Assembly: GCF_006345805.1 (NCBI RefSeq)
Contig: NW_021832700.1
Location: 1 to 29,827 of the forward strand
Length of the DNA: 29,827 nt
Direction: 5' to 3'
DNA from: Octopus sinensis
Taxonomy: Eukaryota
The stretch's first letter is position 1. Each line of letters starts with the position of its first letter. Shown here piece after piece: positions 24,368-28,227 of this stretch. The notes beneath the pieces were generated by a model. The model did no database searches and had not been told where the DNA came from. It saw nothing but the letters and a program-made list of their open reading frames with translations. The translations under genes and the position numbers were made by a program.

Positions 24368-24465
24368 GTATTATTATTATTATTACTACTATTATTATTA
24401 TTATTATTTTATTATATATTATTATTATTATTATATTATTATTATTATTAATTATTATTATTATT
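24368..24465. repeat. (TTA)n array
   Basis: Directly visible; tail side of element X copy 3. Confidence 0.95.
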
Positions 24466-24996
24466 GAGTGAGAGAGCAGTGCATGCCATCAAAGTGACAC
24501 TGGGGTAAAATATACGAAGCCCAGTATACCCATCATGACTACCTGTCTGATAAGGGTACACCAGGCACATGCATCACAACTATATGTGCGCGACATGGTG
24601 ATCTCATATCAAGATAAACAGCGCATGACCTTGCAGGTGGGGCCCAGTTAGAATTTTCTTCTGGTCGAGTAACCCATCCCGCTCAAAAGGTTCCTGAATA
24701 AGGGTTGTTTAAGGATGTTGAACGAAACACCCATGTTTCCAAAGGTGAATTATCCAAACCCCAAAGAATCCCTCTCAACACATGGCTATGATGCTCTCCC
24801 ACTACTTCTGCTCATGATCAGAGATGCACATATCATCAGCCACTAGTTCAACTGGTTATGGTCAAACAACTGACAAGCAAATCTGTGGTATTGAGCAGAT
24901 TATTTGCAGTAGCCCATCTTTTATACCAAGACAAAACAATGTACATGATAACACTTTCAATCAGTTAAGAAGCCACGAGAGCCACTCTCTGGCACT
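24466..24996 (-). mobile_element. Element X, copy 3
   Basis: Colinear with 8985-9530; bounded by (TTA)n on both sides. Confidence 0.9.
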
Positions 24997-25146
24997 ATTA
25001 TTATCATTATCATCATCATCATCATTATTATTATTATTATATTATTATTATTATTATTATTATTATTATATTATTATTATTATTATTATCATTATTATTA
25101 TTATTATTACTATTATTATTATTATTATTATTATTATTATTATTAC
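24997..25146. repeat. (TTA)n/(TCA)n array
   Basis: Directly visible; lies between element X and the LINE 3' end. Confidence 0.95.
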
Positions 25147-27261
25147 TTTTTTTTTCTTTTTTCAAATTTTCTTCCATTGCTTGCCGAGTGTCTTCCCGAC
25201 TCTAGGCGGCAAAGAAACTCATAGTGTATATTGGTAGGCCATTAAACCAAACTCAGTAGTTCGTTCATTTTTTTTTTTTTTTTTTAAAGTTAAATTAAAA
25301 TGCATGAGCAGCAACAGTTCTCACATCGACAATGCTCTTCTCAATACGTGTGATGTACCAGTTAAGACAATCTTTTGCACTTCTTGCAGGGATGGTAAGC
25401 CAGGGATCATTCTCATATAATTTTCGGTTCCCTTCTTGATCATTCCTAGTGCTCCTACGATCACTGGTATTGTAACCGCCTTGAGATGCCACATTTTCTC
25501 AATTTCAATGAGTAGGTCTTTTATATTTTCTGAGCTTGTCAAACTCTTTCGCTGAGATATTATGATCACGGGGATGCTCATGTCGATCAATAAGCAAACT
25601 TTATTGTTTTGGTCTTTCACAACAATATCTGGTTTATTGGCCTTGATGGTTCGGTCTGTATGTACTGGAAAGTCCCACAGAATGGTTACATTTTCTCCTT
25701 CAGTTACAGCCTCAGGGTGGTGATTAACCACTTGTCGGCAGTTTTGATATTGTAATGCCGACTTATTAGCCAGTGGAGATATTGGCCAACTCTGTCATGT
25801 CTTAATTTATACTCCACTGGTGCTAAGACTTTACATCCAGAGATTAGGTGGTCCACTGTTTCAATCATGTCGTTGCAGAATCGGCATTTTGGGTCTGCTC
25901 CATTTTCATCACATTGGCCTGGTAGTTCCGGGTTGATAGGCTTTGGTCTTGAGCAGCCAGGATGAAACCTTCGCTCTCTGCTTTTAACCCTGAGCTCCGC
26001 AGCCACTGATGGGTTTGCTTCTGGTCAACATCAGCTTGTTGCTGCGGGTCACATATTTGCCGTGCAGAGGTTTCTCCTCCCACCTATCAGCCAATTGCTC
26101 GTGCGCGCTTTTTTCATTGCCATCAGTTTCACCTTCTTTGCAACAATAGTTGCCGTACTTCCCTCGGGTTGTTCAGTTTGGGTATCCTGCACGAGATCAA
26201 TAGCAAATTTTTTGCTTTCCTTGATAATAGAATGAAGCTTCTTTCGTCTCTCGTGATTTTCCACGAGCTTTAGCATCCAGTCATTCGATATTTCGAGATA
26301 TTTGGCCAGTCCAATTGTGGTTGTTTTGTAAGCTAGTTCAAATTGGATCAGGCCTCGACCTCCTTGGGCTCTGGGAAGGTAAAGGCGATCTACGTCTGCC
26401 TTTGGGTGGTGCATCCTATTACAACTCAGCAGCTTGCGTATTTTTCTATCTATATTCTTTACTTCACTCATATTCCAGTTCAACACATTGTAGCTATAAG
26501 TAACAACTGGAACTGCTAGGGAATTTATAGCTAACACCTTGTTACGTGCATTAGTTCAGATTTCAGGACTGCACGAACTCTCCTATAACATTCCTTCCCG
26601 ATTTTCTCTTTCATGCTTGCATGCTGAATACCAGAGCCTTCATTTATCCCTAAATATTTGTATGTTTGTTCTTGCTCAAGCTCTCTTATGACTGTGTCAA
26701 CATCTAACACGACTGAATTTGTGGTCTTCACTTTCCCTTTCTGGAAAGTGGCCTTGGCACACTTCTCAAGTCCAAACTCCATCCCGATGTCATCGCTGAA
26801 TGATTTCACGGTGCGCAATAGGCCTTCAAGTTCATTATTGTCTTTACCATAAAGTTTTAAGTCATCCATATAAAATAGATGGCTTATTTTTTTATTGGCA
26901 ATTTTATACCCATACCCTGTTCTGTTTAATTCACTTGTAAGGGGTATTAGGGCTATGCAGAATATTAAAGGTGAAAGTGAGTCACCTTGAAAAATTCCAC
27001 AGTTGATGTTTATATTTTCTGAGGCAAGTACTCCATTAGAGTGGTATAATTGGAGATTCGTATTCCACAACGACATATTGTGCTTCAGAAGTTTGAAATC
27101 ACAGGGGAAATTTTGAAGATGTCCAGCGATCTCAAGATCCATGGATGCGGTATATTGTCGAAGGCCTTTTTATAGTCAATCCATGCGGTGCTGAGATTTT
27201 CTGCGCTTGTTGTGACAGTTCTCAAGGATCATACGATTGATTAGCAGTTGATCTTTGCATC
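25147..27261 (-). mobile_element. R4/Dong-type non-LTR retrotransposon 'A', 5'-truncated, intact 3' end
   Basis: RT motifs GIFQGDSLSP, LFYMDDLKLY, YKYLG; CCHC CRFC...ETVDHLISGC; RHD; RLE ILWDF...KPDIVV...LLIDMSIP; ~175-bp 3' UTR; (AAT)n on both sides. Confidence 0.93.
25321..27261 (-). pseudogene. RT + CCHC + restriction-like endonuclease ORF, broken by single-base indels
   Basis: ORF track pieces 26531-27142, 26049-26537, 25865-26083, 25704-26006 and 25321-25731 join into one protein ending LTGTSHVLRRALSM*. Confidence 0.9.
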
Positions 27262-27374
27262 ATTATTATTATTATTATTATTATTTATTATTATTATTAT
27301 TATTATTATTATTATTATTATTATTATTATTATATTATTATTATTATTATTATTAATATTAATATTATTATTAT
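27262..27374. repeat. (TTA)n array
   Basis: Directly visible; separates the two LINEs. Confidence 0.95.
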
Positions 27375-28227
27375 TTTCTCTTTATCGCAGGTTTTGTTGG
27401 AGCTCATGGAATCTTGCATGAATAGCCGGCTTGCTACCAGCAGCCAACGGTACCATGCTATCCGTTCTTTTCAGCTATCTAATACTTTTCTGAATATTCT
27501 GGCCGCGTGCCAAGGAGGCAAACCTTTTGTGACAGTTCTGCTGGGCATCTATTTCAATTCCTTTATATTCTTCCTGATACCTTCTGCTACTTTTCCCAAG
27601 GACCCAACAATAATTGGTACTATTTTCACCTTCTTTATTTTCCATAGCCGGGCTATTTCGTTCTTAAGAGGGTTCTATCTATCTATCTATCTATCTATCT
27701 ATCTATCTATCTATCTATCTATCTATCTATCTATCTATCTATCTATCTATCTATCTATCTATCTATCTATCTCTCTCTCTCTCTCTCTCTCTATATATAT
27801 ATATATATATATATATCTGTCTGTCTGTCTGTCTGTCTGTCAGTCTGTCTATCTGTCTGTCTATCTGTCTGTCTGTCTATCTTTTCACCTTCCTTCTTGA
27901 CTATTCACAGGTCAAAGGAGCATGCATCGTCAATTATATAGCATATGTGGTGTACCTTGCCCACCACCACTAGGTCGCACCTGATCTGCTAGGGTTGGGA
28001 AATCCCAGAGGATTTTGTTAGTCTCCGACTCCGCCACTCTCTTCGGTTTGTGCTCATAACACGTCTTGCTCTCTCTAGCCCCCAGTTTTCGTACAGTTTC
28101 TAATGTAGCACTTTCGCTACCTGGTCGTGTCGCCACAACTTGTAGAGGTTTTGGGCAGGTCTAGAGTATTTGTTCGTGATATGGGCAATGATCTCATTCA
28201 CTCTATTGCAGATACGCACAGCGGAGA
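27375..28227 (-). mobile_element. Second, divergent R4/Dong-type LINE 'B' (CCHC, RLE, 3' UTR), 5'-truncated
   Basis: Manual translation across frameshifts: LC/RICNRVNEIIAHI...AQNLYKLWRHDQVAKVLH, YEHKPKRVAESETNKILWDFP, CYIIDDACSFD...KKEGEKIDR, PLKNEIARLWKIKKVKIVPIIVGSLG, ARIFRKVLDS*. 3' UTR ends ...gataaagagaaa(ata)n. Confidence 0.85.
27675..27885. repeat. (TCTA)n(TC)n(TA)n(TCTG)n array inside LINE B coding sequence
   Basis: Directly visible. Confidence 0.95.

What the first reader, a model, noticed from the sequence alone, without database searches (positions are those of the whole stretch)
24368..28227. Stack of three different retroelements, all in one orientation, separated by (AAT)n: a microsatellite-targeted insertion system
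Seen in sequence: reading the minus strand gives LINE B (28227-27375), (AAT)n, LINE A (27261-25147), (AAT)n, the 540-bp element X (24996-24466), then (AAT)n. The three elements have unrelated 3' ends but share orientation, and each 3' end runs into an AAT-type array. LINE A and X also have AAT-type arrays at their 5' junctions. Established knowledge: R4/Dong-clade elements encode a restriction-like endonuclease and are often sequence-specific; Dong is known from (TAA)n repeats. Inference: each insertion regenerates or extends an (AAT)n target, so these arrays act as self-renewing landing pads used by several LINE families and a non-autonomous passenger.
Basis: partly seen in the sequence, partly recalled or inferred. 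Interest (0 to 1): 0.8.

Follow-up and report, generated by a model that had tools for sequence, protein, structure and literature searches.

The report
Dong-type retroelements stacked in TAA microsatellites
This is a pile of dead copies of a known kind of jumping gene (Dong/R4-type LINEs) plus a short non-coding companion repeat, all inserted head to tail into TAA microsatellites; that is the documented habit of this family, so the finding is real but ordinary.

Summary
On the minus strand, LINE B, (AAT)38, LINE A, (AAT)50, a 531-bp non-coding repeat X and (AAT)32 follow one another in one orientation. The stack is larger than reported. A fourth LINE 3' end (C, 28690-28935) with a 360-bp trinucleotide tail lies upstream. 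A second stack of the same kind lies at 7414-9960, and an isolated X copy at 11337-11872 has arrays on both sides.

A, B and C are decayed, 5'-truncated LINEs that carry a reverse transcriptase, a CCHC knuckle and an R2-like restriction-like endonuclease. Relatives from corals, shrimp, a psyllid and a killifish have sense-strand (TAA)n at both junctions and also form head-to-tail stacks.

This is the known behaviour of Dong (R4 clade), which has been described for insects, molluscs and cnidarians. Dong-R4 is already listed as the most abundant recently active LINE group in Octopus vulgaris.

Three points stay open:
- X being a Dong passenger is plausible but unproven. It lacks the 3'-UTR hairpin that I found conserved in these LINEs.
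- No RT phylogeny against named reference elements could be run.
- The 5' junctions of B and C are not in AAT arrays.

The parts
28690..28935 (-). LINE C. An extremely 5'-truncated Dong-type LINE holding the last ~70 codons of the ORF and the 3' UTR. It is the top of stack 1.
   Evidence: The conceptual translation is colinear with P0007 residues 1002-1062 (E=0.007). The covariance model of the Dong 3'-UTR hairpin hits 28690-28738(-) at 19.5 bits, E=4e-4, and this copy was not in the training set. Its 5' end abuts (CA)n/(CT)n, not AAT.
28330..28689 (-). Tail of LINE C. A compound trinucleotide array of (TAA), (TGA)31, (TGG)6, (TAG) and (TGG) blocks.
   Evidence: TRF rows 28332-28671; unit run-lengths.
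28230..28312 (-). An 85-bp 5' fragment of the tRNA-like SINE that is abundant in this window. It lies between C's tail and LINE B.
   Evidence: By eye it matches the 5' part of the SINE copies at 29490-29110 and 29827-29530. I ran no separate alignment.
27376..28227 (-). LINE B. An old Dong-type LINE truncated inside the CCHC knuckle, with its RLE region interrupted by a (GACA/GATA/GA/TA)n microsatellite at 27674-27882.
   Evidence: Translation; BLASTP against P0007 residues 878-1060 gives E=7e-20; TRF rows 27674-27882. It does not match the 3'-UTR hairpin model.
27262..27375 (-). (AAT)38 array. It is B's tail and A's 5' flank.
   Evidence: TRF; unit composition.
25146..27261 (-). LINE A. A Dong-type LINE that is 5'-truncated in the RT domain and holds RT, CCHC, RLE and a 177-nt 3' UTR. 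It has at least 8 frame changes and in-frame stops, so it is dead.
   Evidence: It is 96.5% identical over 1805 nt to contig L005, which has longer open frames.
25171..25219 (-). The 3'-UTR hairpin of LINE A, of the form GCC-N4-stem6-loop5-stem6-C-GGC, about 25-40 nt upstream of the tail.
   Evidence: Covariance model R1 scores 41.6 bits.
24997..25145 (-). (AAT)n/(GAT)n array. It is A's tail and X1's 5' flank.
   Evidence: TRF row 24996-25145; unit composition.
24466..24996 (-). X1. A copy of a ~545-bp non-coding repeat that ends in CTCTCTCACTC.
   Evidence: Stops in all frames. Copies at 9527-8985 and 11337-11872 are about 90% identical.
24369..24465 (-). (AAT)32 tail of X1. This is the bottom of stack 1.
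   Evidence: TRF.
9597..9960 (-). Stack 2, upper part. Y is a ~215-bp repeat ending ...CTGCCAGCTCGCCGCCTT. Two extremely 5'-truncated copies of its 3' end lie upstream of it, separated by (AAT)7 at 9811-9831.
   Evidence: Sequence reading; TRF row 9811-9831. The Y family is defined by eye only.
9528..9596 (-). Degenerate CAA/CGA/TAA trinucleotide array. It is Y's tail and X2's 5' flank.
8985..9527 (-). X2. The longest X copy.
8651..8984 (-). Compound array of (TAG)n, (TGG)n, (CAG)n, (TAA)6, (TGA)n, (AGC)n and (AGT)n. It is X2's tail and the 5' flank of LINE A2.
   Evidence: TRF rows 8656-8982.
7414..8650 (-). LINE A2. An older Dong-type copy that is 5'-truncated near residue 105 of the ORF and 3'-truncated in the RT domain.
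   Evidence: tblastn with P0007 covers residues 150-527. It is 80% identical in DNA to LINE A positions 1-307. Sequence read.
11217..11336 (+). (AATA)6(AAT)26(GAT)7 array at the 5' junction of X3.
   Evidence: TRF.
11337..11872 (+). X3. An isolated X copy on the other strand.
11873..11921 (+). Tail of X3, (TAA)3(TGA)12. The same GAT/TGA unit lies on both sides of X3, as expected for insertion into a pre-existing compound array.
23346..23500 (+). Old internal fragment of X, 79% identical to X1 positions 90-247.
   Evidence: sequence read.

Best explanation
**What it is.** The region is a graveyard of (TAA)n-specific non-LTR retrotransposons of the Dong/R4 type, plus non-coding repeats with the same flanks.

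**How it works.**
1. The element's protein (RT, CCHC knuckle and a C-terminal PD-(D/E)xK restriction-like endonuclease) nicks the (TTA)n strand of a TAA microsatellite.
2. The RNA, which ends in (UAA)n, is copied from that nick by target-primed reverse transcription. This often stops early, which explains the 5' truncations.
3. The new copy therefore always sits in one orientation relative to the asymmetric repeat, with TAA-type repeats on both sides.
4. Every copy adds its own tail, so the array survives each hit and can be hit again. Head-to-tail stacks of unrelated copies build up.

**Shown here.**
- The domain content and the R2-like endonuclease fold of the family.
- The flanking arrays at both junctions, the uniform orientation and the 5' truncation.
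- The same architecture in other phyla.

**Taken from the literature.** The TAA specificity of Dong.

**Inferred.**
- The nick site.
- Tail annealing to the target.
- Array growth by insertion.
- Mobilisation of X and Y by the same enzyme.
For: **Domains.**
- RVT_1 scores 7e-21 in LINE A.
- The best PDB matches are R2 proteins, with the CCHC motif aligned.
- A profile of 25 relatives hits R2 at 2.6e-58, against about 1e-26 for L1 ORF2p. It aligns RPDIVI..LID..KYK to R2's KPDLIF..VVDV..KYK.
- An AlphaFold model of the C-terminal 235 aa of relative P0007 (pLDDT 92) matches the R2 C-terminal region at TM 0.71-0.77, E=1.6e-9. The next matches are PD-(D/E)xK cap-snatching nucleases.
- Pfam finds only RVT_1 and zf-RVT in full-length relatives, and they have no N-terminal zinc fingers.

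**Target.**
- In the window, six of eight 5' junctions (A, A2, X1, X2, X3, Y) lie at trinucleotide arrays on the matching strand, with probability about 3e-9.
- X3 has the same GAT unit on both sides of it.

**Other species.**
- L001 holds four elements head to tail with (TAA)n at each junction.
- L002 reads (AAT)62 | full-length element | (TAA)32 | copy truncated at YMDD | (AAT)30 | full-length element.
- The coral locus L003, shrimp L004, killifish L006 and psyllid L007 have sense-strand arrays at both ends.

**Literature.**
- Dong, DongAg and DongBg target TAA (PMC3812793).
- The Dong target is (TAA)n in most insects, molluscs and cnidarians, and the clade has no N-terminal Zn fingers (PMC7998251).
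- The Bombyx Dong 5' junction was amplified with a (TAA)7 primer (PMC3774820).
- Dong-R4 accounts for 5 families and 1129 recently active insertions in O. vulgaris (PMC13282606).
Against: - No RT phylogeny with named references was possible, so 'Dong/R4' rests on architecture, fold, target and literature, not on a tree.
- B's 5' end abuts a SINE fragment and C's abuts (CA)n/(CT)n, not AAT.
- B and X do not match the conserved 3'-UTR hairpin model.
- No HDV-like ribozyme, which is reported for Dong 5' ends, was detected at the 5' ends of full-length relatives with Rfam.
- The cross-species sample is small, at about 15 elements in 8 loci, and those loci were chosen because they encode long ORFs.
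- The source organism of the window is not established. 'Cephalopod' is my inference.
Confidence: 0.85

Rival explanations
1. The AAT arrays are only 3' tails, as with the (TAA)n tail of the Drosophila I factor. Insertion is essentially untargeted or merely AT-biased, and the stacks are coincidence.
For: Every array in the window can be read as the tail of the element upstream of it. The 5' junctions of B and C are not AAT.
Against: - Six of eight 5' junctions sit at arrays that cover under 5% of the window, on the correct strand (P about 3e-9).
- X3's 5' array is not preceded by any recognisable element, and the same GAT unit continues beyond X3's own short TAA tail.
- Full-length and truncated relatives in six other species start directly after (TAA)n.
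- The elements encode an RLE, not an APE nuclease.
Confidence: 0.04
2. The LINEs are microsatellite-specific members of another RLE clade, such as HERO or NeSL, rather than Dong/R4.
For: Kojima and Jurka note that some HERO families target microsatellites (PMC4640811). Two Hero families are annotated in O. vulgaris. No tree was built here.
Against: - TAA is the documented target of Dong specifically.
- The relatives lack N-terminal zinc fingers, as described for R4/Dong.
- Close relatives occur in Exaiptasia and other cnidarians, taxa from which PMC7998251 lists Dong-like elements.
- Dong-R4 is far more abundant than Hero in octopus, at 1129 against 13 recent insertions.
Confidence: 0.08
3. 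X (and Y) are not passengers of the Dong enzyme. Either another LINE with trinucleotide tails moves them, or X is simply the 3' part of a longer unknown element.
For: - X shares no sequence with the 3' ends of A, B or C.
- X does not match the Dong 3'-UTR hairpin model at E<=10.
- X has no tRNA, 5S or 7SL head.
- X tails are often TAG, TGG or TGA rather than TAA.
- No X copy could be retrieved outside the window.
Against: - All three X copies have trinucleotide arrays on both sides, share one precise 3' end and sit in Dong stacks in the same orientation as the LINEs.
- Their 5' ends fall within 30 nt of each other, which suggests a discrete ~545-bp unit rather than random truncations of a long element.
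Confidence: 0.35
4. The stacks were assembled after insertion, by unequal recombination, deletion or assembly collapse between long AAT arrays, rather than by successive insertions into one array.
For: Long near-identical arrays are recombination-prone and hard to assemble. B's 5' junction with a truncated SINE looks like a deletion product.
Against: - The same head-to-tail architecture recurs in independent assemblies of other species. There the 5' truncation points abut the array directly, for example at YMDD in L002.
- Recombination between arrays in dispersed locations would not by itself keep orientation uniform in every stack.
Confidence: 0.08

Closest known systems
Dong (Bombyx mori), DongAg (Anopheles gambiae) and DongBg (Biomphalaria glabrata): (TAA)n-specific LINEs of the R4 clade
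   Same: - A single ORF with RT, a CCHC knuckle and a C-terminal restriction-like endonuclease.
- No N-terminal zinc fingers.
- Insertion into (TAA)n in one orientation, with (TAA)n at both junctions.
- Present in molluscs.

   Different: Nothing found here contradicts membership. The copies here are dead and 5'-truncated. The tails in this genome are unusually long (50-360 bp) and include long pure TGA, TAG and TGG blocks. Grouping by RT phylogeny was not tested.
R2 (28S rDNA-specific RLE LINE; solved structures 8gh6, 8ibw, 9dou, 9nl2/3)
   Same: It is the closest solved relative by sequence (2.6e-58 for the family profile) and by fold of the CCHC+RLE region (TM 0.71-0.77). It also inserts by TPRT at a specific repeated target.
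   Different: R2 targets one site in 28S rDNA and has N-terminal zinc-finger and Myb domains. The elements here sit in TAA microsatellites, and their relatives have no N-terminal zinc fingers.
Other microsatellite-specific LINEs: Waldo (ACAY)n, Mino (AC)n, Kibi (TC)n, Koshi (TTC)n and Togen (TG)n
   Same: They share the strategy of targeting a simple repeat that is regenerated by the element's own tail (PMC3812793; PMC4640811).
   Different: They target different repeat units. Some belong to the APE-type R1 clade or to NeSL relatives, not to R4.
Telomere-repeat LINEs (SART/TRAS in Bombyx, HeT-A/TART in Drosophila)
   Same: They form head-to-tail, single-orientation arrays of mixed families at a simple-repeat target. 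This comparison rests on my own knowledge and was not tested here.
   Different: These are APE-type elements with a chromosome-end location and a host function in Drosophila.
SIDEs, the non-autonomous internally deleted derivatives of R2
   Same: They are a possible model for X: a short non-coding element using the target site of an RLE LINE. This rests on my own knowledge.
   Different: SIDEs keep the 5' ribozyme and the 3' UTR of their parent. X shares neither sequence nor the 3' hairpin with the Dong copies available here.

Membership tests
RLE-encoding non-LTR retrotransposons (R2 group) | Reverse transcriptase domain of the non-LTR type | tested here: met
   Pfam RVT_1 scores 7e-21 in LINE A and 1e-26 to 6e-29 in full-length relatives. 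The YMDD motif was read.
RLE-encoding non-LTR retrotransposons (R2 group) | CCHC zinc knuckle between the RT and the endonuclease | tested here: met
   CRFCNDMIETVDHLISGC in A aligns to CRHCDADIESCAHIIGNC of R2. C875, C878, H887 and C892 are invariant in 25 relatives.
RLE-encoding non-LTR retrotransposons (R2 group) | C-terminal PD-(D/E)xK restriction-like endonuclease | tested here: met
   The AlphaFold model of the C-terminus of relative P0007 (pLDDT 92) matches R2 structures at TM 0.71-0.77, E=1.6e-9. In LINE A itself the PD and D motifs are in frame, but the KYK stretch is out of frame, so this copy is inactive.
RLE-encoding non-LTR retrotransposons (R2 group) | No N-terminal apurinic/apyrimidinic (APE) endonuclease | tested here: met
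   Pfam finds only RVT_1 and zf-RVT in the 1062-aa relatives.
R4/Dong clade | Insertion into (TAA)n in a fixed orientation, with repeats at both junctions | tested here: met
   In the window, A, A2, X1, X2, X3 and Y meet this, while B and C do not at the 5' end. Relatives in 7 loci from at least 5 animal groups meet it.
R4/Dong clade | No N-terminal zinc-finger motifs, in contrast to R2, NeSL and CRE (PMC7998251) | tested here: met
   The first 330 residues of four full-length relatives contain 0-2 cysteines and no CCHH pattern. The window copies are 5'-truncated, so this cannot be read from them.
R4/Dong clade | Diverged N-terminal Myb/SANT-like domain (PMC7998251) | not tested
   This needs HHpred-type profile comparison against Myb. 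I did not attempt it.
R4/Dong clade | RT-domain phylogeny grouping with Dong (L08889) and R4 (U29445) rather than with HERO, NeSL, R2 or CRE | not testable with these tools
   No named reference sequences of these elements were reachable. The protein hits carry only 'uncharacterized protein' names.
R4/Dong clade | HDV-like self-cleaving ribozyme at the 5' end (PMC3774820) | tested here: inconclusive
   All window copies lack their 5' ends. Rfam found nothing at gathering level in the window or in loci L001-L005. Permissive scans of the 5' ends of the full-length relatives in L002 and L003 also found nothing. Such ribozymes are often missed by sequence models.
SINE (for element X) | Head derived from tRNA, 5S or 7SL with an internal pol III promoter | tested here: not met
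   ARAGORN finds no tRNA-like gene in the window. Rfam has no match at gathering score.
SINE (for element X) | 3' end shared with the partner LINE | tested here: not met
   There is no BLAST similarity to the 3' ends of A, B or C and no match to the Dong 3'-UTR hairpin model. X is therefore described as a non-coding retroposon-like repeat and is not filed as a SINE.
Non-autonomous LINE-dependent retroposon (for element X) | Non-coding, in several dispersed copies with one precise 3' end, a simple-repeat tail and variable 5' ends | tested here: met
   There are stops in all frames. Three copies plus a fragment are present. The common end is CTCTCTCACTC followed by a trinucleotide array, and the 5' ends are staggered within 30 nt.

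The most novel reading that the evidence does not exclude
Two things may not yet be described.

(a) This LINE lineage carries a short 3'-UTR hairpin of the form GCC-N4-[6-bp stem]-[5-nt loop]-[stem]-C-GGC. It sits at a fixed ~25-45 nt from the (TAA)n tail and is kept by compensatory changes from octopus-like sequence through cnidarians, shrimp, a psyllid and a killifish. It is absent from Rfam. It would be the candidate RNA handle that the RT recognises.

(b) X (and Y) lack this hairpin yet occupy the same targets. This would mean that an RNA ending in (UAA)n can be mobilised into TAA arrays through tail-target annealing alone. That would be relaxed 3' recognition by an RLE-type LINE, and it could explain the very large number of unclassified short retroposons in octopus genomes.
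Probability: 0.3. Interest if true: 0.45.

Novelty: already known. Interest (0 to 1): 0.2.

Why it matters
For genome annotation, it explains why long AAT-type microsatellites in this genome are embedded in mixed, single-orientation clusters of LINE fragments and short repeats. It also warns that such arrays are insertion hot spots and are hard to assemble.

Biologically it adds nothing to the established picture of Dong as a (TAA)n-specific element. It is one more clear example of that picture, apparently from a cephalopod.

Two by-products could interest people who study how RLE-type LINEs choose their RNA template. This question is currently being pursued for R2 as a gene-insertion tool.
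- The conserved 3'-UTR hairpin.
- A hairpin-less companion repeat, X, that occupies the same targets.

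Tried and rejected
- **Tracing X outside the window.** A protein search with the antisense ORF that spans X's 5' end found nothing. Two exact-match scans of metagenome contigs with invariant 24- and 26-mers of X also found nothing. X therefore could not be studied beyond its four copies here.
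- **HDV-like ribozyme.** Rfam at gathering level gave no hit on the window and five loci. Permissive scans of the 5' ends of full-length relatives in L002 and L003 gave only chance-level hits. A single-sequence fold of the L003 5' end was no better than shuffles (z=-0.9).
- **tRNA-like head in X or Y.** ARAGORN found none.
- **Shared 3' recognition element in X and B.** The covariance model of the Dong hairpin finds A and C but neither B nor X. Single-sequence folds of the X, B, C and Y 3' ends are not distinctive (z from -1.9 to +1.6).
- **Named Dong and R4 references for a tree.** The original Dong paper and Kojima and Fujiwara 2004 are not held. The protein hits carry no element names.
- **RNA editing as the source of tail variants.** I considered whether the TGA, TAG and TGG blocks reflect A-to-I editing of the RNA before reverse transcription. 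I rejected this as the default. The arrays also contain T-to-C variants (CAA, CGA, CAG), and the variants occur as long pure blocks, as expected from point mutation plus slippage.
- **Identifying other window ORFs with Pfam.** The ORFs at 14519-14761, 15580-15882, 16284-16607 and 18890-19132 gave nothing.

Full report
**1. The observation**

I read the minus strand of 24000-29827 and ran Tandem Repeats Finder.
- Period-3 arrays lie at 27262-27375, 24996-25145 and 24369-24465.
- Between them lie an 852-bp LINE fragment (B), a 2.1-kb LINE fragment (A) and a 531-bp non-coding element (X).
- All are in one orientation, and each runs at its 3' end into an AAT-type array.

LINE A translates, across at least eight frame changes and several stops, into RT motifs (FYMDDLKLY), a CCHC finger (CRFC...H...C) and a PD...D...K region. 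Its first base is a genuine truncation point. An older copy elsewhere in the window (A2, 8650-7414) continues upstream through the homologous position.

**2. The stack is larger, and there is a second one**

A covariance model described in section 5 flagged 28690-28738. The 250 bp ending there encode the last ~70 residues of the same kind of ORF. This is a fourth LINE, C. The 360-bp compound array at 28330-28689, built of TAA, TGA, TGG and TAG blocks, is its tail.

Between that tail and B lies an 85-bp 5' fragment of the tRNA-like SINE that litters the window. B's 5' junction is therefore not AAT. C's 5' end abuts (CA)n/(CT)n.

The window also holds two further X copies.
- X2 (9527-8985, minus) sits in a second single-orientation stack. 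That stack reads: truncated Y copies, (AAT)7, Y, a degenerate CAA/CGA/TAA array, X2, a 330-bp compound array, and LINE A2.
- X3 (11337-11872, plus) is isolated. It has (AATA)6(AAT)26(GAT)7 upstream and (TAA)3(TGA)12 downstream. The same GAT unit continues on both sides of the insertion, beyond X3's own short TAA tail. This is what insertion into a pre-existing compound array predicts.

**3. More than chance**

Period-3 arrays cover 3.9% of the window (4.5% with a 10-bp margin). Six of eight 5' junctions (A, A2, X1, X2, X3, Y) lie at such an array on the matching strand. The probability under random insertion is about 3e-9. Uniform orientation within the stacks seen here and in two related loci has a chance of about 1e-3.

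**4. What the LINEs are**

- LINE A has Pfam RVT_1 at 7e-21.
- Its best matches among solved structures are R2 proteins, with the CCHC motifs aligned.
- A search of the large protein collection returned 1440 relatives at E<=1e-10. These come mostly from marine invertebrates (corals, anemones, shrimps), fish and insects, and none carries an element name.
- A profile of 25 of them hits R2 at 2.6e-58, against about 1e-26 for L1 ORF2p. It aligns the family's RPDIVI...LID...SKYK to R2's KPDLIF...VVDV...RKYK.
- An AlphaFold model of the C-terminal 235 residues of the full-length relative P0007 (mean pLDDT 92) matches the C-terminal region of five R2 structures at TM 0.71-0.77, E down to 1.6e-9. PD-(D/E)xK cap-snatching nucleases are the next hits.
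- Full-length relatives show only RVT_1 and zf-RVT in Pfam, so they have no APE domain. They have no N-terminal zinc fingers.
- B aligns colinearly with the last 185 residues of P0007 (E=7e-20).

A, B and C are thus decayed members of one RLE-type LINE lineage, not unrelated kinds of element. A is fairly young. It is 96.5% identical over 1.8 kb to a short metagenome contig (L005) with longer open frames. It is nonetheless dead, because the lysine-bearing stretch of the endonuclease is out of frame.

**5. Relatives elsewhere behave the same way**

I fetched the DNA around eight relatives.
- **L001** holds four elements head to tail, with (TAA)n at every junction.
- **L002** reads (AAT)62 | full-length element | (TAA)32 | a copy truncated exactly at YMDD | (AAT)30 | full-length element.
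- **L003** (the coral Oculina) has a 5' end that starts directly after (AAT)20.
- **L004** (the shrimp Penaeus) starts directly after a multi-kilobase AAT array.
- **L006** (the killifish) and **L007** (the psyllid, with (AAT)81) are 5'-truncated copies that start within 0-30 bp of an array.
- Wherever the 3' UTR is present, it is followed by a sense-strand array.

On this small sample the test comes out in favour of targeting.

**6. A conserved 3'-UTR hairpin**

The 3' UTRs share no long sequence similarity. They do share a motif, GCC-N4-[6-bp stem]-[5-nt loop]-[stem]-C-GGC, at a roughly constant distance upstream of the tail.
- On eight sequences, 93% of cells pair, against 17-47% when the partner is slid. 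Six of nine pairs show compensatory changes.
- The structure was read from these sequences, so that comparison is favourable by construction.
- A covariance model built from them then found three copies outside the training set at the expected place: LINE C in the window (19.5 bits, E=4e-4), the psyllid element (24.8 bits) and the killifish element (23.1 bits). These have new compensatory stems such as GGUGUAC/GUACACC and GGUCUC/GAGACC.
- Rfam has nothing for these regions.
- B and X do not match.

**7. What X is**

X is non-coding. Its three copies are 89% identical on average and share one precise 3' end, CTCTCTCACTC, followed by a trinucleotide array. Their 5' ends are staggered within 30 nt. 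This fits a discrete ~545-bp non-autonomous retroposon better than random truncations of a long element.

X has no tRNA-like head. It has no similarity to the LINE 3' ends and no Dong hairpin. It could not be found outside the window. I therefore do not file it as a SINE. That the Dong enzyme moves it is an inference from its flanks and its company alone.

**8. Mechanism**

Domains, fold, flanks, orientation and truncation are shown here. The TAA specificity of Dong comes from the literature. The following steps are inferred:
- The endonuclease nicks the TTA strand.
- The (UAA)n end of the RNA pairs with the nicked target and is copied by target-primed reverse transcription.
- Incomplete copying gives the 5' truncations.

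Dong has been reported to carry a 5' HDV-like ribozyme that releases it from upstream TAA co-transcripts (PMC3774820). That would suit head-to-tail stacks, but I could not detect one in the relatives. The window copies lack their 5' ends.

**9. Comparison with what is known**

- TAA microsatellites as the target of Dong, DongAg and the snail element DongBg are reviewed in PMC3812793.
- PMC4640811 notes that most RLE LINEs target repeats.
- PMC13282606 lists Dong-R4 as the largest class of recently active LINE insertions in Octopus vulgaris, with 5 families and 1129 insertions.

Every defining feature I could test is met. The RT phylogeny could not be run for lack of named references, which leaves a small chance that these are HERO-like elements.

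**10. Verdict**

The only possibly new items are the conserved 3'-UTR hairpin and the hairpin-less companion X.

That the window comes from a cephalopod is my inference. It rests on the SINE and microsatellite content, the Dong-R4 literature and the 96.5%-identical contig. It is not established.

Noticed in passing
window 25171-25219(-), 28690-28738(-); L001 3901-3948, 7269-7317, 9123-9170; L002 6769-6817; L003 7922-7968; L004 9145-9192; L005 1847-1894; L006 6869-6916; L007 7473-7515: A conserved 3'-UTR hairpin, GCC-N4-stem6-loop5-stem6-C-GGC, lies a fixed short distance upstream of the (TAA)n tail in this LINE lineage across phyla. It is supported by compensatory changes, and a covariance model recovers three copies outside its training set. 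It is not in Rfam.
   Followed up: yes
window 28330-28689, 8651-8984, 11312-11334, 11883-11920: The tails are not plain (TAA)n. They contain long pure blocks of TGA (up to 31 units), TAG and TGG, plus CAG, AGC and AGT. Most variants are transitions of TAA. Mutation plus slippage is the default reading. Stacking of tail-only (fully truncated) insertions, or editing of the RNA before reverse transcription, was not excluded.
   Followed up: partly
window 27674-27882: A 209-bp compound (GACA)n(TA)n(GA)n(GATA)n microsatellite replaces about 16 codons inside the endonuclease region of LINE B.
   Followed up: no
window 29110-29490(-), 29530-29827(-), 28230-28312(-); also ORF-like traces at 192-488, 1983-2276, 12466-12723, 13653-13931, 29264-29581: There are many copies of a ~370-bp tRNA-like SINE (GGCGCAGGAGTGGCTGTGTGGTAAG...), each preceded and followed by (CATA)n or (CA)n-type repeats. 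A different repeat family thus shows an analogous association with a different microsatellite. ARAGORN and Rfam do not call them.
   Followed up: no
window 9597-9960(-): Repeat Y ends ...CTGCCAGCTCGCCGCCTT followed by an AAT-type array. Two extremely 5'-truncated copies of its last ~50 nt are stacked just upstream. This is a third family with the same tail and stacking behaviour, defined by eye only.
   Followed up: partly
window 8780-8815(-): Inside X2's tail array sits a ~40-bp non-repeat island (tttattgactataaaaggtttacacc...). It resembles the WIDYKKAF-coding stretch of LINE A. It could be a tiny LINE fragment or chance.
   Followed up: no
L001 9212-9230; L002 8809-8825; L003 4147-4175: Full-length relatives begin directly after (TAA)n with conserved 5' ends: TGTCCTGGGTARGAC in L001 and L002, and GGGGGCATGGGGTAGGAC in the coral. 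The start of the ORF region is also conserved at the DNA level between L001, L002 and the coral. No HDV-like ribozyme was detected with Rfam.
   Followed up: partly
L005 (whole contig, 1983 bp): A copy 96.5% identical to LINE A lies on a short contig of an environmental metagenome assembly (ENA ERZ22666216). This is presumably stray animal DNA in that sample.
   Followed up: no
L008 6409-6500: In the Exaiptasia locus the LINE homology stops at an inverted (ATT)n array. This may be a second element inserted in the opposite orientation, or a rearrangement. It is the only opposite-strand array seen next to an element.
   Followed up: no
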